A DNA stretch of 64,000 nucleotides from Bigelowiella natans CCMP2755 (GCA_000320545.1 ADNK01000875.1:310001-374000), one strand, 5' to 3'. Positions 50,197 through 60,512 are shown, numbered from the stretch's first letter. The notes: generated by a model from the letters alone, not told the origin. Numbers and translations are program-made.

Positions 50197-53135
50197 TCAA
50201 TCTGATTTTGCGCGCAGAACTCGGTATTTGGATGCAGGGCCTTTATCATCGCCGCTAATAATAGACCCGTCATCGTCTACTCGAAGAAATTTACCGGGAA
50301 CTTTTACGGATTCTAAGGCAACAAGCTGTCCTGGATTTTTTCGCTTGTTATGAATTCTGAAATGACAAGCCTTTCCTCCCTTACCATTAATGGTGACTCT
50401 ATCTTTTTTAGCGTTCACCTTCAAGTACTTCTCCTTGTTTAGATGGAGAAATTTGACTTCGTTATTCCCAATATAGAACATAGCCCACTTAGTTGCCCTC
50501 CCAAAACCACCCAGAGCGTCTGCTTTCTTTTTGTTACATCTGATATTTTTATGAGTCTTCGACGTTATGTGAATCTCCATTCTCTCACCTTTCTCCCCAT
50601 TGAGCTTGCATATCCCATGGTATTTGTCCTTATTACCGATAAGCTGGAAGAATTTTTTACTCTCTTTTTCAACTTTGGTCTCATCATCCTCTTTCTCGAT
50701 TTCGGTAACGAGGAAGAGCTCCCAGCCACGACAATGAGGTTGGGTAGTGTAGCCTTTTCCGTCCATTAGCGAGCATAGATAACTCTCATGGATAGTCTTG
50801 AATCCAATCTTTCCCCATTTAGATATTGGCGTGAAGAGTGCATTAGGAGAGCATTTTTTATTAACGCCTATCGTTCTGTTCTTACGGGCGACAAGATAGG
50901 TTCCCTGAGAGCTTTTCAGAGCTACTTTACCTCTCGAGATCTCCACTGTAAATACAGAGGAAGAGTCGCCTTCTTTTGCAACTTGAGAGATGACGCCATC
51001 GCTGTCCACAGACATGGTAGAGTTGTGCATGTCCCTTAGACTTACTTTATCTCCGCTCTCGAATCCAAGGGCCTGTAATGGGCCGTGTGGAACAATACTG
51101 AACAGTTCCCAGCCTTTGCAGTGAGGATTGCAGCAAAATCCAATGTTGTCATTCATGGCACAGATGAACGTTTTGTGGGCCGAGCGAAGTCCGAGTTTCT
51201 GGCCTTGAAAAACCGGATCAAACATCTCCCACGCCTTGCAATAAGGCTCAAGCTTGACACTGTTGTCTTTGCGGGCGCTGAGATAAGTTCCATGGTGGCT
51301 GAAGAAAGCACACATTGAGGTGAATAATGTTAATAACGGGACTGTGAAATTGAATAATAAATTCTGCATCGAATTGTAATCAAAATTATTGCTACCTCCT
51401 GAAAGCAACCTTTGCTTCCTTGATCTCTACTGTAAAGATCTCCCAAGCTTTGGCTTGTCCCATTTGCCTTACAGAGAGATTCCTTCTTGCGGAAATGTAG
51501 GTGTTGTGGTGGGTGAGCAGCGCAATCTTCGTTCCATCGAGATTAGCAAATTCTCCCTGAGGTGTCGAGCTGATGTCTTTCTCAGTGATCTTTATCTTCT
51601 TACTCTTCACATCCTGCAGGGTCTGGTCAACCTCTTTAGCTTTAGCTTCGGCCTTTTCGCGACTCCTTTTCTCCTCATCTAGTTTCTTCCGGAGCTGCTC
51701 GTCTGTTTCTTTTGTATCACTGTCGTCCTGTTGAGTGAACTCCTTCAAGTCATCATCAATGTCGTCGTCATCATCATCATCATCGCTATCCTCATTATCC
51801 TGCCCAGATCCGCCAAGTTTTTCCAGCAGCTCTTGCTCCCTTGCCTTGGCTGCAGCGATTTGAGCTTCAAGTTTGAGCTTCATTTCCTGTTCACGTCGAA
51901 TGAAAAGTTCTTCGATCGACTCCTGAGAGTCAATAACTTAGGCATTCTCGTAAGGATTTGACCCAATCACTTCTATCACCTTTTCGCGAATTTGGGCCTC
52001 CTTTGCGGCCTTGAGCTCTGCCTCTAGTTGCTCCGCACGTGCTTTCGCTTCTCGCTCCCTTTGCTTGAGAAGCGCCTCCTTGGCTTCCGCTGCTTTGTTC
52101 GATAGATCCTCCTGCAGAGGTAGGAAGAAGTAGAATGAATCCATGAGACTGAAATTCAGTCAAGTTGTGCCTTCTCCTACTAACCAGCTGGATGATGGTA
52201 TCTTTGTGCTTTTCACCGATGACAGTAGCCACAGCTTTCCCTAAACGTTGAAATGTTGTTTAGGATCTACATCACATGACCTTTTGGAAAAGAAATGTAT
52301 CCCTCACCGCCTTTCATGTAGGTCAGATTCAATTCCTTGCCGCTGATGTGGTTACTTAATGGGTCAAAGCCGAAATAGCTGCTCAGATCCTTAGAGCTTT
52401 CGAACTTGAGGGAGAATCCAGCTACCTTTAGTTTATTTGTATGCTCAGGACTAGTTCGTGACCAACAATGACGCAGCACACCTTCTTTTCAAGGAGACCG
52501 CGGACGTCAGTCCTAATCTTATCTGTTCCATACATAGCAGAAATGATACCGTAGCGTGATGGATTTGGGGCGGGGGGCAGCCCTCCACTCCCTTCGAACT
52601 GAGTTTTGAAGAGGATCTTTCCAGATTCACGTCTGTGGGATTCTTCCTAAAGAAAAATAGTTATAATAAACGATTCACAATTTGCGAGAACTTTCGCTAA
52701 TTATAGGGCATACATGAATAAAGAATTACCTTATAGAGAGGAATCCATGTCTCCGGTTCACTCAGAAGTGAGAATATCGGAATTCTCACCATGCAACATT
52801 CGCCGTCCAGGCCAAAATTTTCATTCATGATTTTTACCTGAATGTGTCTGTCATCGCAGCCTTTGAGATCGAAATCGAGAGTTTGGTTCCATTGAGGATG
52901 ACGATCCCCGTCTTTATGCACCTTGAGTAGGGTAAGTTTGATTCTGTGTGACAAACACTGTCAGCATATGCTCGTAACTCGTAACCTTAGTTTTCTTCTT
53001 CTGCTTTCCAAATTCGAGGACGCAATAAGGATCTTGCTTTCCCATGAGTTGCTTCTTCGGAACGTCGCTCGCTCGGACGCACGTGATTGACAGCTTGCCA
53101 GTCAAAGGTTCGATGTCGTCAAATACTGTCCCCAT
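50197..53135 (-). CDS. C2 domain + coiled coil + acidic linker + fascin-like (actin-crosslinking beta-trefoil) repeats, multi-exon
   Basis: GKLSITCVRASDVPKKQLMGKQDPYCVLEFG...VHKDGDRHPQWNQTLDF (C2); EK-rich coiled coil at 51600-52110; repeated fascin-type units IALLTHHNTYISAR...AWEIF, VALKSSQGTYLVAR and IGFKTIHESYLCS...CRGWELF. Confidence 0.8.
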
Positions 53136-54095
53136 GGTGAAATGTCTGACAAAATTAGAAAACATGTAAAACTCTCCGTATCCATAGAATTCTTCATCTG
53201 AATTTGATCTGATGCTAGGAACTAAGAACTAAGAACAAGAAATAATCGAGAAATTGCGCAGATTCGGTACGAATCCCACTCCGTTCTCATTGAGAATTTT
53301 CATCACAAAGATTCAATGCGAACCATTCGGTTCATCCTCACTAAGGACTTTCCAACAATAGATTCAAGTCTTTTCAACTTTTCAAAGCTCATTAAAGCTC
53401 ATTGGTGGAAACACGAGTGAAGAAAGGCATCCTTCTTACGTCAGCTATGTCGGTCACTTCAGTTGTGGGTTTGCGGAGGACGAGAACTTGGATGTGTTTG
53501 ATTCTCGCAACCTACGTGTTGATATTTCCACATCATGACGCGCACACTTGTGCTGCTGATGCTGCTGTTACTACGACCGTACTTCTTCCCAGACGCGAGC
53601 ACAAAATGCAACCGAATTCCTAGAAAGTGTTCGGTGTTCAGTTCGTTTATCCCATGTGTGATTTTTCGTAGTAGCAGCACAATCGTCGTCGGTGAGCTAT
53701 TCCTGGAACATTGTGTTGTTAGGCGAAATTACCTGGTTGAGGCTGTTCTCGAAATAGATACATCTCCGTAGGTAATTTCGCCTTGTAACAAACGTATCAC
53801 CGAATGACAATAAAACACAGGCTTTTCCTTAGCGTCGACATGGAAGTTTCTTCTTCTTCTTCTTACCAGCTACAACCAACCGCAACGCAGATTCGCTCGT
53901 CCTCGTACCCCCAGTCCTTCGGAACCAGGAGGATGGATACCGGTTGAGGACGCACCCGAATGACCACAATGTTTCTGAGACAGTGCAGCTACCTACAATA
54001 TTCTCAACTCGTAGGTCCCCCATGGGAAACAATAACACAAGTTGAATCAGAGCCCGCACAGCAGCCATTAACGCGAGCTTGGGTGCTTGCCGAGC

Positions 54096-55662
54096 ATGCC
54101 ACGTAGACGGGAGGGGCAGAGGGCGTCACCTCTGCAGCGCAGTTTAAATGTTCGTTGCATAGGTTTGGTGTTTTTGATGACAAAACTATCGAGCGTTCAC
54201 TGTAATGGTGGGGAGGAGGACATCACAGATATAACAGGGAGCTTCCCTTCCTCACATCGCCGCAGAACTGGTGTGCTCATTGACGATACAGAATCGAGGC
54301 CTCGAAGGTATGTATAATGCTAGGGACGTGTAAGCTACCATACAGAGCTATTCTTTCTCCGTGGTAGATTCAATGAAAGAATGAGTGTTCGACATTCTGT
54401 TGATTCACTTGCCAGGATGCACCGCGTAAAGGCATCAAGGAAGTCTGTGGTTGGAAGTCGTTCAAGGCGAAAGAGACTGCGGCGGCAGAGGGGGAAAAGC
54501 AGGAATCCTTCTGGGCGTGACTGGTCGCTCAACTCAGCGATCATTGGGAAGGAGGATGGGGGGGGGATGCCCAAAGGCGTGATGAACATTATCTGGCCTC
54601 CTGCAGAGCTGCACAGGCAGGCAAGGATCAGAAGGTTGATCTCTGCACGATGTTTGGTGGTTATAAGCGCAGTTTATTTGCATTTATCACTATCCCTCTC
54701 AGCCTGTATAGCACTGATCGTTTTAAATCGATGTACATAAATAAATAAATAAATAAATCACCATATCGTTCAGATCTGTATCGCGTTCAAGTACGAAAAG
54801 GGGCCTGGGAACATACAATCAGAGACATGAATGGAGGTGGGACTCGTACGCCGACGCCGAAAATGCTGTCCCGATTCGTAGAGAGGTATATAGTCTTCCG
54901 GAGATGGAGGATCAGGCTACGATTTTGGAGCTTTCGACCCAAATCCAAAACGAGGTGAATAATAGTTAGTTGACAGCCTGGCACTGGAACCATCATCTTG
55001 ACAGAAAACTAACGTGCTGCTGCTGCTCCTACTGACCCTTGACCCTATGACTGCATTGTACTCCTATATTGTTGTTTGAGCTTGGCTGCACACGATCAGG
55101 CCGAATGGTATATGAGCGGATATCACATCATGCACAATGCTTCCCGCCTCAGAGCCATGATACAACAAACACCGGTAGTACTAGTTAAGAAATACTATTC
55201 CGCAGCAGTAGCAGTAGCAGCAGCATGTGGTCCTGGATATCTATTATAGAGGGGGCAGGCAACACTGAAAAGTCTCTATCTAAGCTTACTAAAAGAGAAG
55301 AAGTAGAGCAGCCTGATTTCCCAATGTAGGGAGTAGTTGTTTATTAATACTCTGCTATCGATTCTTCAGGGAGGGTGGGTTCCTCTAAACAACATCGTTA
55401 CGCGTACACGAATCAAGGCCATTACCCGTACCCCCCCCCCACCCCCCCCCCCTTCCTAAACTAGGCTTAAATTAGCCACCGATACACCATTAATTTTATG
55501 CTTCGACTGCTGCTAGTTGCATGTAGGAGGGCACGGAATTTTGAACTTTTGTTATTTTCTTTAAAATAGTATATGTTGGTCCTTGTCCAACCGTCCTCCT
55601 CCCTCTCTGGCGTGAGCATTGCATGTTGTTGCCCTCTTCCGTTTCAGACATACTGCATGTGT

Positions 55663-55703
<41 letters not shown>

Positions 55704-56374
55704 TGTCGTATGCCTTTCTCAATCTCACCACTACATTTCTGAGAGATATTCTCATTGTTCGTGGATGGCGGTTGCTTTCAACGAGACAAGGAGACTCAGA
55801 ACTTGTGGTCACGGCCCTGAAGTTGAAATCGATGAGCTCAAAAGTGCTCGAGATCCACGAAAATGGGCAGTTACGGACCGATCCCTCTCTCCTGTGCAAT
55901 CTTTTTGCACCAATAGATTTGACTATGCTTTGCCTTCCTTACAAACGATTTGAGTAGTAAAAGATACGTTTCGTATATGCATCATCGTTATCATCATCAT
56001 CATCATCATCATCACTATCATCATCAAGTAGCTGAACAACACACAAATCTGATGATGATAGGTTTGTCCGGAGGAGGGAACCTCTGCCCGAAGGTGGGGG
56101 TCGTCAGTTTGCAGCGTATTCACATCGTTGGGGGTGGGGCGCGCTAACGATATTTGTTGGGAGTAGGCGTGGCTTCGAGGGGAGAGGCCAGGATACAGGA
56201 GAAGGTTGTGCCGTCTTAATGACAACAACAATAACAACAACAACAACAACAATAACAATAATATAACAATAATGACACTTAAAAGCTGTTTCAGACAGAG
56301 AAATAGGCTCGAGACACCAACAAACATTATGAGCAGCTGCACGACGGCCAATACCGATGGGGAGATCGTCATGG

Positions 56375-56413
<39 letters not shown>

Positions 56414-56564
56414 ACATACCTCTCTTCATTCTAGGTGGAGTACATGTTCGGTGACCAATATCTGCTTTCGCATACACAATATTTATCAAGACTCCAGTAA
56501 TAATAAATAAATAAATAAATAAATAATGAAGAGTGCCATTCATGACTGCTATACTTTGAACCAA

Positions 56565-56618
<54 letters not shown>

Positions 56619-58590
56619 GTCTTCCTTATCATATTCCAAATTCATCTGCCACCATCGGTTTTCCTTCCACAGTGCAAATTGCCGATTTTGCTTTATTCAT
56701 TGGCGTGAGGAGAGACAGGCTGTCGTTGGAACGACGATGACGGCATCAAAGCCATGATGAATTTACTTAGCTATATATAGAGCACTCTTTTCGATCCTCC
56801 TGCTGCTGCTGCAGCACACAAAATGTAGTAGAGCAGCCGTTATTTATTGCCGTTTGCAAATAGGCGCGATGGAGGATGGGTGGGCCTGAAATCTCTGGTA
56901 GGGAAGCTGCCACCAAGGTTGTGTCGCATGCTGTTACACATGTGTACACACACACAAACACACACGCGCGCGCGCGCGCGCCAATGTGCGTGGAGGGGAG
57001 AAGAAAAGCGGAGGATCCCCATGATCAGTTGTATCAAGTGATAGTACACTACCACAGATAATGATGATACTGAAAATAGGATTACCATTTCCTCGCAGGT
57101 TGCGCTGCTTACGGGGGTCATCAAAGATTCTCCAACGAGTCGTCAATCGCTCGGTGAGTGTAGCAGACAATAGCTCAAATTTTGTACACGTTTTGACTAA
57201 CGTCTATCTGTTACTGCTGCTAGAAACTGGTGGAGATGGACGATAGTGGTAAATACGCTCGGAGGAGGCAGCCTTTACCTCACTCGCGAGGAGAGGTTTC
57301 CAAACGGTGATGAGAGAACGATAAAATGGTGAACCAGTCGTTTTGGGAGGATAATTACGATGATGACTGTTGCGTAGGTCCTACACAGCTTCTCACTTGA
57401 ACCCCTCAGAGGCTGCTGCTTATAAGGTAGAGAGCTACTATTGCTTATCACCCCCATTCCCGCATTAGTCTACTACTTGGCGGATATCATTCGCATTATC
57501 AGTTTCTTCCTTTTTCCATGTATGTCTCTGCATCACCCCCCCTCCTTTCAGTCCCAGTCACTCACTCACTCATTCTCTCACTCACTCACAACCTTATCAT
57601 CAAGGCTGCCGGGGTTCTCGCATGGAGGATTTACGGAGGTTGGTTAGCAGTAGTGGGGGCAAGGAAGCAATGGCAATGGGTGACAGCCTCCCGTGCTGTA
57701 AAGCAGTGATGTGGTTTTATGATTATCATTATCTTGTTTGTTGTCAGGAGAGCTTCAGGTTTTGATGGGGATTGACAAGGTAGTGGTGGTGGATGCGGTG
57801 GTAATCCTTGTTGCATCTGCTGTTGTACTACCGCTTTTGCAACCCGTTTCTGCTTCACGATTCTCTCCAATAATATCAAAGGTTGGGGGGAGACGACTCA
57901 ACTTTCTCGGCGGTATCAGAGACCGAACCGATGTAAAATTCTCATCATTAAACACGCGCCACAAACACACAGATGTCCTTCATGAATGGTTCTGGCCAGG
58001 TTGATGTTGCGTACACGGCCGTGAGGGAATTCGTGGAGGAATCGGTTAGCCGTGGATCTGTTTGTGTTACTGTTGGCCCCCAAAGGGGAAGGAGTGAAGC
58101 AAAAATGTGATATGCGTGCTTTCTTGCCATTATTCCGTGGTAGGGCGGGTTCCTCACCGAGGAGATGAAATCGAAGATGCTTGGCGAGTTCAGGCGGTAG
58201 GCGTTATTATCACAATAGAGCCAACCCTCAAAAAAAAAGAAACAATTTTTGAAAAAGCACATCACCAGATTCGGGCTTGCAGTGTAGCGTATTTAACGAG
58301 ATAGTTGTCGTAGTAAACGTATGGCTACGAATTACTTGAAATCGTGCAGAACAACGCCCAGAAAAGTGTATGTAGCAGGAGAGGTCACCATCATACCACA
58401 TTACTACCAATATTCACCGGAAGTTTCTATCTCAGGGGGGGGGGAAGCTCGGAAAATTCAACGGGTAAGAAAGGAAGCGGGAGATAACGATGACAGTGCA
58501 GCCATCCTTCGCTCTCCTTCCTAGTTTGAGCATGCTGCTGTTCGTAACATCGCCATTTCTTTCTACATTATTATGCTTTCTTTGGTCCAA

Positions 58591-58625
<35 letters not shown>

Positions 58626-59354
58626 AACTTACTCTCACAGCAGCAGAAAGCAGTAACTTGAAGAGGGTTCTCTGGTTCGCGGAGTCCAGGTACTACTACT
58701 ACAACTATACTACTACCTCTGCTACTATTTGCATCCCTACTACAGCTACCAAACTATATATATGATGGTGGCTTAGGTAACAAAATGACCCCTTTCTTTC
58801 CCTGAAATTTGCACCTTTTAATCTCTCGAAAAACACCGCCTTGATGATGTCACTACTGCTTATTACTACAACATCGTAGATACGCTCTCTATTTTTATCG
58901 ATGGCCTTACTTTGATCTGACGCCGTATTTCAACCGGAGACCAAGGGGGGAAATGGAGGTAGCGACGTTCGAGAATATGGCATTTCTCGCCTTTCACATT
59001 ATATTGATCTCTATGAATTCCAAAAAATGTAGGAGCTCATGTGGGTGTCTCTCTCCGAACTTGTATCCTCACCAACAACGGTAAAGATTAAAGAAAGAAT
59101 TTTGCCTCTCAGGTCGTTTTGGAAATGCTTAAAAAAATAGCACTTGCATAGCTAGCAAGAACAGACCTTGATTATGGTCCACTTTTTTGGTTCACAGAGG
59201 GTTTTCTGTGGATATTCTACGAGATGAAAAAATGAAGTCACAGCTAGCCGGACTTGTATCACTAACACCAATGGATGATACACATCGTTACAAAGGCCGG
59301 AAAGCTACTCACCCGAAGTTGTTACCACAGAACCACTGTTCACTTGCCCTCTAG
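54096..59354 (+). CDS. Tandem La-motif (LAM x2) + Nudix hydrolase protein encoded by roughly 20 small exons
   Basis: Spliced by hand with consistent phases. LAM1: LSTQIQNEAEWYMSGYHIMHNASRLRAMIQQTPGGWVPLNNIVTRTRIKAITRDSELVVTALKLKSMSSKVLEIHENGQFVRRREPLP. LAM2: IQEKVEYMFGDQYLLSHTQYLSRLQRDGGWVGLKSL...RLRCL...KLVEMDDSGKYARRRQPLP. Nudix: AAGVLAWRIYGGELQVLMGIDK...LNFLGGIRDRTDVDVAYTAVREFVEESGG...ELMWVSLSEL. Confidence 0.8.
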
Positions 59355-60512
59355 TATATATAAATTGATAGAGATGTAACAGCTGGAGATGGTGAGTATA
59401 TCCGACGCCGTGTTATATGCATAAAGCTAAGCTTTGTCTCAGGCAATATCAACTTTAAAATAGTATCATCTAAAAAGAAAAGTTTGGTTCCCGACGTATT
59501 TACAAATCATTTTTTAAATCGCGTACTTTCCACAGCGATGTGTGAGGCAGGATTTCGCTTCTGCTCTGATTCTGTATCCGCGATTGATCGCGCAACAGCG
59601 CCCATATCACAAGATTGAGTGAGATAGACAAGCATCACGATTTTGTTCCTATTTCGGGACGCACGCTTGCTTATGATACGCTCGGTGTCGATATAATCCT
59701 GCGGCTCAGGCATACGTTCGCATGATGGTAGCATGACTTTGACTTACATGCTGTTACGCATACGAGATGTGGGTTGTAGCTTCTTTCATAGCTTACACAA
59801 CGTAACCGTTCTAGCGTTGCTGCGCATGAGTCACGCACGAGCACAAAATTTATGCATGATGGCATCTAAAGCAGATTAACTGTGTTGGTCTGTACTGCAA
59901 ATAATGTGGTGTATGTGTGTGTGTGTGTGTGTAGATATCTAGATTTCAGTCATGGCGCCATATGAATAATTAATAGCCGGTGTATTTTATTTCAATACCA
60001 AGAAAATATCTACGAATAACCCACAATTATGTTCGCATTTTGGTATTTATATGCAGTCTGCTGCTACATGCTCAATATTTTATTGTTGGGGCGTGGCATT
60101 CATGGATGCGGCATTATTTATGTAAAGCTAGCAGCTGTTATGCGCAACGTATTTCAATGTACCTACATAGAAGCACACGATGTGCACACAAATCGCAATA
60201 CACTCGTCATATTTTTTGTGCGGAAGATATATTTAATTTATGTTCTATTCAAATTACATTCAAGTTGGAGCTATTCAGAAGGAACGGCTGACTGGACTGA
60301 TAATATTACCTCTAATTTGTATTATTCTGCGGTACAGGATATTTACGCTTAAATGTTATAGACAAGGATTTGGACTACAGAAGCCAAGGTACACCCTAGC
60401 TATAGGATACTTGTTCACATAAGAAGGCAATAGTCTCCAAGAGTTAATAATAAAGATCTCATTCGGTGATCATGTACTCGGGAATAAAGAGATGCTTACG
60501 GTAGGACCGTAT

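What the first reader, a model, noticed from the sequence alone, without database searches (positions are those of the whole stretch)
54096..59354. Hidden tandem La-motif + Nudix hydrolase gene, a candidate RNA-end-sensing decapping/pyrophosphatase that may be organelle-targeted
Seen: roughly 20 micro-exons, invisible in the ORF track, splice in frame to two La motifs (I-x-x-x-x-E-W/Y-Y/M...GGWVxL...R...L-E-x-x-x-x-G-x-x-x-RRRxPLP; about 54930-56093 and 56167-57280), followed by a Nudix fold (AAGVLAWR...LQVLMG...FLGGIRDRTDVDVAYTAVREFVEESGG; about 57605-58196) that retains the metal-binding RExxEE glutamates. Known: La motifs bind RNA ends (UUU-3'OH, poly(A)) and normally occur singly, paired with an RRM (La, LARP1/4/6/7); Nudix enzymes such as Dcp2, Nudt12/16 and RppH remove caps or 5' pyrophosphates. 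I do not know a LARP family with two LAMs, no RRM and a fused Nudix domain. Inference: one polypeptide could couple 3'-end recognition to 5'-end cleavage. The N-terminus (RCIGLVFLMTKLSSVHC, then an R/S-rich stretch) looks weakly like a signal plus transit leader; if real, it could send this eukaryote-type RNA factor to the plastid or periplastid/nucleomorph compartment.
Basis: partly seen in the sequence, partly recalled or inferred. Interest (0 to 1): 0.85.

Follow-up and report, generated by a model that had tools for sequence, protein, structure and literature searches.

The report
Two La motifs fused to Nudix
The alga Bigelowiella natans expresses one gene of 23 small exons whose protein joins two divergent La-type RNA-binding motifs to a probable Nudix hydrolase, a pairing I found described nowhere and whose function is untested.

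Summary
RNA contigs from three studies show GT..AG splice joints on the + strand. One 1183-nt contig runs from exon 6 to exon 23, so the second half of La motif 1, La motif 2 and the Nudix part are on one mRNA.

A local La profile hits the spliced model twice (33.8 and 14.7 bits; best of 999 shuffles 3.9). Both motifs have lost most of the six residues of the RNA 3'-end pocket, including D33, and no RRM follows.

The Nudix part is probable, not proven. It keeps RE-U-x-EE-x-G, which occurs in 10 of 20,000 shuffles. Generic Nudix profiles score it above all 20,000 shuffles. It fails the canonical G-x5-E-x7 spacing. Its spacing instead matches the published numbering of human NUDT16, an RNA-decapping Nudix.

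The leader is weak. A very basic stretch suggests nucleus or nucleolus rather than plastid.

No paralogue, orthologue or published description was found, but those searches were insensitive. The scan had noted this stretch once before (s1-759487), without follow-up.

The parts
53880..54307 (+). Exon 1: 5'UTR of 216 nt with 4 upstream ATGs, then start codon at 54096 and aa 1-70 (basic head, short hydrophobic stretch at aa 21-29)
   Evidence: Contigs of three runs begin at 53880-53886 and are spliced at 54307/54416. Frame and upstream ATGs.
54416..54634 (+). Exon 2: aa 72-143, very basic (21 K/R in 73 aa)
   Evidence: Joints seen. Composition.
54774..54954 (+). Exon 3: aa 145-204, ending in the first helix of La motif 1
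   Evidence: Contig pieces and joint 54954/55100.
55100..55174 (+). Exon 4: La motif 1, the E-W-Y segment
   Evidence: Joints on both sides seen. Aligns by reference to the E-Y-Y-F segment of two B. natans La proteins.
55370..55427 (+). Exon 5: La motif 1, the GGWVPL segment
   Evidence: Joint 55174/55370 seen. Pfam La hit at E 0.057, profile positions 28-48, on the open stretch that holds it.
55791..55869 (+). Exon 6: La motif 1, third segment
   Evidence: The 5' joint is inferred from AG, frame and an unbroken La alignment. The exon end at 55869 is a contig piece end. The 1183-nt contig starts at 55794.
56062..56093 (+). Exon 7: end of La motif 1 (V-R-R-R-x-P-L-P)
   Evidence: Joint 56093/56167 seen, with 30 nt on the short side.
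56167..56207 (+). Exon 8: linker and start of La motif 2
   Evidence: Joint seen on the 5' side.
56435..56496 (+). Exon 9: La motif 2, the E-Y-M-F segment
   Evidence: AG..GT, frame and contig arithmetic. Aligns by reference to E-Y-Y-F.
56864..56917 (+). Exon 10: La motif 2, the GGWVGL segment
   Evidence: Joint 56917/57099 seen, with 52 nt on the short side.
57099..57153 (+). Exon 11: La motif 2, third segment
   Evidence: Joints seen on both sides.
57224..57306 (+). Exon 12: end of La motif 2 (A-R-R-R-x-P-L-P) and linker
   Evidence: Joints seen. Anchor piece of the 1183-nt contig.
57378..57426 (+). Exon 13: about 25-aa linker between La motif 2 and the Nudix part, too short for an RRM
   Evidence: Joints seen. 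Layout.
57605..57638 (+). Exon 14: first strand of the Nudix-like domain
   Evidence: Joints seen.
57748..57779 (+). Exon 15: second strand of the Nudix-like domain
   Evidence: Joints seen.
57882..57932 (+). Exon 16: the F-x-G-G loop that opens the Nudix box
   Evidence: Joints seen. Aligned to the W-x-F-P-x-G segment of Nudix profiles.
58000..58044 (+). Exon 17: Nudix helix with R-E-F-V-E-E
   Evidence: Joints seen. Motif statistics.
58144..58196 (+). Exon 18: end of the Nudix box (G-G). If intron 18 is kept, a TAG stop follows at once
   Evidence: Joint 58044/58144 seen. Sequence. A lower-depth contig at 58168-58464 shows partial retention.
58436..58464 (+). Exon 19: 29-nt micro-exon (Gly/Ser-rich loop)
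   Evidence: Needed for both frame and length. Among five candidate 29-32-nt exons that keep the frame open, it is the one whose two ends coincide with contig ends in other runs.
58641..58689 (+). Exon 20: Nudix-like domain
   Evidence: Joint 58689/58880 seen, with 48 nt on the short side.
58880..58958 (+). Exon 21: Nudix-like domain, aromatic strand
   Evidence: Joints seen. Single copy in the genome.
59033..59112 (+). Exon 22: the E-x-x-E-x-x-W-V-x-L segment
   Evidence: Joints seen. Collinear second match to the Nudix profile.
59198..59700 (+). Exon 23: aa 552-602, TAG at 59352-59354, and a 3'UTR that runs beyond 59700
   Evidence: Joint seen. Raw RNA reads of run X21 pile up at 59123-59700. 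Single copy in the genome.

Best explanation
Shown: one expressed nuclear gene of Bigelowiella natans has 23 exons. Its 21 internal exons average 69 nt. It encodes a 602-aa protein with four parts.
1. A basic, low-complexity N-terminal region of about 195 aa.
2. Two tandem, divergent La motifs (winged helices) at aa 197-285 and 292-375. Each ends in R-R-R-x-P-L-P, and no RRM follows.
3. A linker of about 25 aa.
4. A C-terminal domain of about 200 aa with a Nudix box that keeps the catalytic R-E-x-x-E-E helix.

Inferred: the C-terminal domain is an active Nudix pyrophosphohydrolase of the NUDT16-like kind. The two La-type motifs and the basic N-terminus hold it on RNA. It would then cut a diphosphate link at RNA 5' ends (m7G, NAD/FAD-type caps, or triphosphate). 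It probably works in the nucleus or nucleolus, beside the canonical Dcp2 that the genome also has. The La motifs probably do not read a UUU-3'OH end, because the pocket residues are replaced.
For: - Gene and transcript: covering the joints, a single 610-codon frame and exact contig arithmetic.
- La motifs: a profile built here from 15 rows (P0001 counted twice) representing 13 distinct Pfam-La proteins hits aa 197-280 at 33.8 bits and aa 298-371 at 14.7 bits. The best of 999 shuffles scores 3.9. Exon by exon, by reference, the pieces line up in order on the La motif of two B. natans La proteins, and Pfam La gives E 0.057 on exon 5.
- Nudix motif: RE-U-x-EE-x-G occurs once, at aa 448. It appears in 10 of 20,000 shuffles, and the relaxed full box in 1 of 20,000.
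- Nudix profiles: two generic Nudix profiles score the last 210 aa at 12.9 and 10.6 bits. The maxima of 20,000 shuffles are 9.6 and 5.7. A second collinear match falls on the E..E..W element.
- NUDT16 spacing: F430, G432 and E449/E452/E453 sit at the same distances as Phe57, Gly59 and Glu76/79/80 of human NUDT16 (PMC4485890).
- Known biology: NUDT16 is a nuclear, RNA-binding decapping enzyme (PMC2566886) that also removes metabolite caps (PMC7337524).
- Canonical Dcp2 is encoded elsewhere in the genome.
Against: - No curated model reaches its cut-off exon by exon.
- Six-frame Pfam scans of the whole genome with La, NUDIX and Nudt16-like find nothing at this locus.
- Against the whole 602-aa protein, the Nudix profiles beat the best of 999 shuffles only narrowly: 10.8 against 10.0 bits, and 7.4 against 6.1.
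- tblastn and phmmer find no likeness to the 15 other Nudix loci of this genome.
- The canonical G-x5-E-x7 part of the box is not met.
- The match to NUDT16 beyond the numbered residues rests on my memory of its sequence.
- No orthologue was found, so conservation of the fusion is unknown.
- No activity, RNA-binding or localisation data exist.
Confidence: 0.5

Rival explanations
1. The Nudix domain is real, but it works on small molecules (IDP/ITP, ADP-ribose, dinucleotides), as NUDT16 also does. The La-type motifs only place it in a compartment or complex, or bind protein. It is then not an RNA-end enzyme.
For: NUDT16 is described as a housecleaning (deoxy)inosine diphosphatase as well as a decapping enzyme (PMC4485890). 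Both La motifs have lost the RNA 3'-end pocket.
Against: Fusion to two nucleic-acid-binding folds and a very basic N-terminus (41 K/R in 196 aa) is most simply read as tethering to RNA. The aligned position of NUDT16's base-reading His24 seems not to be kept, but that rests on an alignment from memory and was not tested.
Confidence: 0.2
2. The C-terminal part is not a working Nudix hydrolase. It is either a chance motif in an unrelated fold or an inactive pseudo-enzyme of the NUDT16L1/TIRR kind. The protein is then only an RNA- or protein-binding factor.
For: No curated model passes. Generic profiles give only 10-13 bits, confined to about 34 + 26 residues. The strict box is not met. The protein is rich in R and E, and one whole-protein shuffle reached 10.0 bits against 10.8.
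Against: The full RE-U-x-EE-x-G helix is kept, which inactive relatives usually lose (my knowledge). 0 of 20,000 shuffles of the domain reach its score with either profile. The strand, strand, F-x-G-G, helix, aromatic strand and E..E..W elements come in the Nudix order.
Confidence: 0.2
3. The protein is imported into the complex plastid (periplastidial compartment or nucleomorph, or stroma) by a signal peptide plus a transit-peptide-like leader.
For: The most hydrophobic stretch of the whole protein is aa 21-29 (Kyte-Doolittle 2.49 over 9 residues). B. natans proteins bound for plastid, nucleomorph and PPC need such bipartite leaders (PMC3542566).
Against: The hydrophobic core is short and lies behind a 20-residue head with 6 K/R. 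What follows is first acidic, then an R/K-rich run typical of nuclear or nucleolar signals. The words Nudix and La domain do not occur in the main text of the plastid/PPC proteome paper (weak). No predictor could be run here.
Confidence: 0.12
4. Two neighbouring genes (a La gene and a Nudix gene), or a chimeric assembly, rather than one protein.
For: Contigs across two genes do not by themselves prove one transcript (caveat printed). The exon 5/6 joint is not among the printed joints.
Against: One contig covers exons 6-23 with only spliced sequence. It has the same depth in each run across La2 and Nudix joints (119.2, 105.2 and 51.2). A single stop-free frame of 610 codons crosses all 22 joints. 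La motif 1 itself spans the one unprinted joint without a gap.
Confidence: 0.02

Closest known systems
La-related proteins (LARP superfamily: La, LARP1, 4, 6, 7)
   Same: Carries La motifs that a La profile recognises over their full length (E-[YW]-[YM], G-W-V, and the L-E-v-x-x-x-G-x-x-v-R-R end).
   Different: Two La motifs in tandem instead of one. No RRM1 behind either, so there is no La module. Four of the six pocket residues are replaced non-conservatively in each, including D33. An enzyme domain is fused at the C-terminus.
NUDT16 / X29 (Pfam Nudt16-like, PF22327), nuclear RNA-decapping and (d)IDP-hydrolysing Nudix
   Same: The same non-canonical spacing, F-x-G-G, then 14 residues, then R-E-x-x-E-E-x-G. 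This matches the published positions Phe57, Gly59 and Glu76/79/80. An RNA-linked role is plausible.
   Different: NUDT16 is a stand-alone protein of about 195 aa, known from animals. Here the domain is the tail of a 602-aa protein of a rhizarian alga. The Pfam model could not be scored on the spliced protein. Equivalents of Arg50 and His24 are not evident.
Dcp2, the canonical mRNA-decapping Nudix
   Same: A Nudix catalytic domain preceded by an N-terminal regulatory or RNA-related region. A possible 5'-cap substrate.
   Different: No Box A domain. B. natans has a separate canonical Dcp2 with Box A plus NUDIX (locus L004), and it shows no detectable likeness to this protein.

Membership tests
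LARP superfamily | A La motif recognisable by profile | tested here: met
   A local profile of 15 rows (P0001 counted twice), representing 13 distinct Pfam-La proteins, scores 33.8 bits (aa 197-280) and 14.7 bits (aa 298-371). The best of 999 shuffles is 3.9. This was run on the spliced model in a script only.
LARP superfamily | Pfam PF05383 gathering score (37.1 bits) | tested here: inconclusive
   Exon by exon, only 13.7 bits, E 0.057, on exon 5. The other exons give nothing. The whole-genome six-frame scan finds 9 La matches elsewhere and none here. The spliced protein was not submitted.
LARP superfamily | La module: an RRM1 directly after the La motif | tested here: not met
   La1 is followed after about 10 residues by La2. 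La2 is followed after about 25 residues by the Nudix-like domain. There is no room for an RRM of about 80 aa.
LARP superfamily | Six conserved pocket residues Q20, Y23, Y24, D33, F35, F55 (PMC7928032) | tested here: not met
   La1 reads E, W, Y, A, R, R. La2 reads V, Y, M, T, Y, K in the profile alignment, where the 13 distinct reference proteins mostly keep them.
Nudix hydrolase superfamily | Catalytic half of the Nudix box, R-E-U-x-E-E-x-G | tested here: met
   One match at aa 448, found in 10 of 20,000 composition-preserving shuffles.
Nudix hydrolase superfamily | Full canonical box G-x5-E-x7-R-E-U-x-E-E-x-G-U | tested here: not met
   No match. The protein has G-x5-D-x8-RE..., and the last position is G rather than a bulky hydrophobic residue.
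Nudix hydrolase superfamily | Profile match (Pfam PF00293) over the domain | tested here: inconclusive
   Pfam exon by exon gives nothing, and there is no hit at the locus in the six-frame genome scan. Home-made profiles of 11 and 89 Nudix sequences give 12.9 and 10.6 bits on the last 210 aa, above all 20,000 shuffles, but they cover only the box and one later element.
Nudix hydrolase superfamily | Alpha/beta/alpha Nudix fold | not testable with these tools
Structure prediction needs the spliced sequence, which has no reference.
Nudt16-like (PF22327) | Spacing of Phe57, Gly59 and Glu76/79/80 as in human NUDT16 | tested here: met
   F430, G432 and E449/E452/E453 give the same distances of 2, 17, 20 and 21 from the Phe/Gly (against the residue numbers in PMC4485890).
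Nudt16-like (PF22327) | Pfam model score (cut-off 27 bits) | tested here: inconclusive
   The six-frame scan of the genome gives one weak hit elsewhere and none here. The exons are too short, and the spliced protein was not submitted.
Dcp2 | Box A domain (PF05026) before the Nudix domain | tested here: not met
   La motifs occupy that place. The true Dcp2 of this genome is at G000:C192, with Box A at 75.6 bits plus NUDIX at 59.9 bits.

The most novel reading that the evidence does not exclude
This is the first La-motif protein in which the RNA-binding unit is fused to an enzyme. Two re-tooled La winged helices deliver a NUDT16-type Nudix hydrolase to particular RNAs. One polypeptide then selects an RNA and removes its 5' cap or cap-like group. 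It would be a decapping route separate from Dcp2, and NUDT16-type decapping enzymes would be far older than animals.
Probability: 0.3. Interest if true: 0.75.

Novelty: new variant of a known kind. Interest (0 to 1): 0.55.

Why it matters
La motifs are known as one half of the La module (LaM + RRM), and they sit in proteins that bind RNA but do not cut it. A protein with two La motifs, no RRM, a rebuilt binding pocket and a hydrolase tail would widen what a La motif can do. It would give RNA-decay workers a natural "binder plus enzyme" fusion to test.

If the Nudix part is NUDT16-like, that family, so far traced only from humans to cnidarians (PMC2566886), would reach a rhizarian alga.

The locus also shows how genes made of 29-83-nt exons escape ORF-based and six-frame annotation. 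No protein containing the exons I searched with (1-3 and 23) turned up in the protein collections searched here.

Tried and rejected
Pfam exon by exon and on open stretches gave only La at E 0.057. PDB sequence search with two open stretches that hold Nudix exons gave noise only.

Six-frame scans of the whole genome with PF05383, PF00293 and PF22327 found nothing at this locus.

HMMER of exon 23 against 1.84 billion representative proteins gave 0 hits.

Word-based homologue searches:
- With a B. natans La protein, only the protein itself came back.
- With an alignment of La exons on two La proteins, 13 La proteins came back and none has a Nudix domain.
- With exons 1-3 on a scaffold, no model of this gene came back.
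- The last two scored only the 8000 candidates with most shared words and see only proteins of 315-1003 aa, so the blanks are weak.

Own-genome protein searches with exons 21 and 23 found only the locus itself, so there is no paralogue. tblastn and phmmer of the C-terminal domain against 15 other Nudix loci of the genome found nothing. hhalign against 89 Nudix sequences aligned 26 columns, P 0.011.

The metagenome scan with the stretch holding exon 17 was blank. A 15-aa query was too short.

My attempt to collect bacterial Nudt16-like members failed: 0 of 401 Bacillota genomes.

Loose ends at 53847/53864, 55220/55225 and 56799 do not occur in the window. They lie at simple repeats, so I take them for unrelated transcripts.

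Left out by rule: any database, Pfam, PDB, atlas or structure job with the spliced 602-aa model. It was used only inside scripts that read window.fa.


Full report
**Organism and place.** The window is G000:C2862:310001-374000. An ORF on another contig of the same assembly is 100% identical to the EukProt entry jgi/Bigna1/146675. The genome is therefore Bigelowiella natans, as earlier notes of the scan say.

**Observation.** ORF lists show nothing longer than 138 codons in 54.0-59.5 kb. I laid one raw RNA run and Logan contigs of three other studies on 53750-59700.

- The tool listed 15 joints, all GT..AG on the + strand. Each has the same depth within a run.
- A further joint, 54634/54774, follows from the contig pieces.
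- I placed the remaining exons by GT..AG, reading frame and contig length.
- The result is 23 exons. All 22 introns are GT..AG (67-367 nt, mean 157). The 21 internal exons run from 29 to 219 nt, mean 69.
- The published averages for this genome are 8.8 exons of 159 bp per gene (PMC12730881).
- The joined exons hold one frame of 610 codons between stops. The first ATG is at 54096 and the TAG ends at 59354, giving 602 aa.

**One transcript.** Run X4 has a contig of 1183 nt.

- Its two printed anchors are contig position 320 at 57223 and position 902 at 59195.
- Both fit my exon lengths to the base if the contig starts at 55794, 3 nt inside exon 6, and ends at 59476.
- That fixes the unlisted joints of exons 8-10 and 18-20.
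- It also fixes the 29-nt micro-exon 58436-58464. The ends of that exon are also the ends of separate, lower-depth contigs that carry the flanking introns.
- The second half of La1, all of La2, the Nudix part and the 3'UTR are therefore on one spliced molecule.
- A second contig covers exons 1-5 in all three runs.
- Only the exon 5/6 joint is inferred. Frame, splice sites and an ungapped La alignment across it support it.
- Lower-depth contigs inside introns 5, 6, 9, 18 and 19 show some intron retention. Retention of intron 18 gives a stop right after the Nudix box.

**La motifs.** Curated models do not see them in pieces. Pfam gives only La at E 0.057 on exon 5, and the six-frame genome scan misses the locus.

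- By reference, the exons line up in the right order on the La motif of two B. natans La proteins.
- In a script I built a La profile from 15 rows, with P0001 counted twice. They represent 13 distinct proteins that carry Pfam La: 12 returned by the homologue search and one ORF from this genome.
- I ran it on the spliced model with 999 shuffles. It scores aa 197-280 at 33.8 bits and aa 298-371 at 14.7 bits. The best shuffle scores 3.9.
- There are therefore two La motifs. The second is much more divergent.
- They share 17 of 71 aligned positions. Each ends in R-R-R-x-P-L-P.

- The six pocket residues that define RNA binding by La motifs are Q20, Y23, Y24, D33, F35 and F55. D33 reads the 3'-OH (PMC7928032).
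- La1 reads E, W, Y, A, R, R at these positions. La2 reads V, Y, M, T, Y, K.
- No RRM can follow either motif. The gaps are about 10 and 25 residues.
- This is not a La module, and canonical UUU-3'OH or poly(A) 3'-end reading is unlikely.

**Nudix part.** The evidence here is weaker than for La.

- Neither Pfam on the exons, nor PDB sequence search on the open stretches that hold exons 15-17, nor the six-frame genome scans with PF00293 and PF22327 gives anything at this locus.
- The domain shows no pairwise likeness to the 15 other Nudix loci of the genome.

The following evidence speaks for a Nudix domain.

- The catalytic half of the box, R-E-U-x-E-E-x-G, occurs once, at aa 448. It appears in 10 of 20,000 shuffles, and a relaxed full box in 1 of 20,000.
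- Two home-made Nudix profiles were used: 11 B. natans segments, and those plus 78 bacterial genes.
- They score the last 210 aa at 12.9 and 10.6 bits. No shuffle out of 20,000 passes 9.6 and 5.7.
- Against shuffles of the whole R/E-rich protein the margin is thin: 10.8 against 10.0, and 7.4 against 6.1.
- The matches cover the box and, collinearly, the later E..E..W..L element.

The strict box is not met. The protein has G-x5-D-x8-R-E, not G-x5-E-x7-R-E.

- That same longer spacing follows from the published residue numbers of human NUDT16: Phe57 in a G-F-P motif, Gly59, Glu76, Glu79 and Glu80 (PMC4485890).
- Here F430, G432, E449, E452 and E453 keep all those distances.
- My recollection of the NUDT16 sequence suggests about 40% identity over the 30 residues around the box. 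That is a lead from memory, not a test.
- I could not bring a NUDT16 sequence into the session, and a search for bacterial Nudt16-like members found none in 401 genomes.
- I put the Nudix fold at about 0.75 and the NUDT16-like assignment at about 0.45.

**N-terminus.** The first 196 residues hold 41 K/R and 30 S/T.

- The only hydrophobic stretch is aa 21-29, behind a 20-residue head with 6 K/R. An acidic patch follows, then 21 K/R in 73 residues.
- That is a poor signal peptide and a good nuclear or nucleolar signal.
- I could run no predictor. I give organelle import about 0.12.
- The 216-nt 5'UTR has four upstream ATGs.

**Mechanism proposed.** The shown facts are the anatomy and the expression. 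The rest is inferred.

- Active Nudix chemistry is inferred from the three glutamates.
- Tethering to RNA is inferred from two winged helices plus a basic tail.
- A substrate at RNA 5' ends is inferred by analogy with NUDT16, which binds RNA, removes m7G/m227G caps (PMC2566886) and cleaves NAD, FAD and dpCoA caps (PMC7337524).
- The genome has an ordinary Dcp2 elsewhere, so this would be an extra, specialised enzyme.

**Novelty.**

- Full-text searches for La motif with Nudix found nothing relevant.
- None of the 13 La proteins retrieved carries a Nudix domain.
- I found no paralogue, no orthologue and no gene model of this locus in the protein collections.
- Those searches were limited by exon size and length filters. 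"Undescribed" therefore means "not found here".

It was never sent to a database, Pfam, PDB, atlas or structure tool. All work on the joined model was done in scripts that read window.fa.

**Verdict.** This is a real, expressed, previously hidden gene. The tandem La motifs are confirmed, the Nudix domain is probable, the 3'-end-sensing and organelle readings are not supported, and the function is untested.

Noticed in passing
window 58436-58464: A 29-nt micro-exon that keeps the frame. Without it, or with intron 18 retained, the protein ends 18 residues after the Nudix box (stop at 58198-58200). Lower-depth contigs show that intron-18- and intron-19-containing forms exist, which may be unproductive splicing.
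   Followed up: partly
window 55658-55700, 55980-56026, 56218-56258, 56377-56410, 56571-56614, 58591-58624: Six of the introns of this gene carry pure microsatellites: (TG)21, (CAT)15, (ACA)12, (TA)17, (AG)22 and (TAC)11. RNA contigs break at them.
   Followed up: no
window 55100 and 56435 (exon starts): The intron just before the E-[WY]-[YM] segment lies at the same aligned position and phase (0) in La motif 1 and La motif 2. The other intron positions differ. This fits an old tandem duplication of the motif.
   Followed up: partly
window 50197-51405 and 52914-53162, minus strand: The upstream neighbour on the other strand has exons with a fascin/beta-trefoil domain (E 1e-14) and a C2 domain (E 1e-7). 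There is no evident link to the La-Nudix gene.
   Followed up: partly
L001:1113-2933 (+) and L002:1097-2707 (-): The two clear La-motif genes of B. natans found in single long exons also lack a Pfam-detectable RRM. One carries weak TPR matches. La proteins without an obvious RRM may be usual in this alga.
   Followed up: partly
window 54037, 54239, 54828, 55836, 59071, 59379: Six single-base differences are seen only in the contigs of run X2 (study P2). This is probably a strain or allele difference rather than editing.
   Followed up: no
window 53880-54095: The 5'UTR holds four upstream ATGs, all out of frame with the main ORF. One opens a 48-codon uORF.
   Followed up: no
L013:350-1177 (-), G000:C2006: Another B. 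natans Nudix gene has a box reading A-R-E-F-x-E-E-S, like the one here. It shows no wider likeness to this protein.
   Followed up: partly
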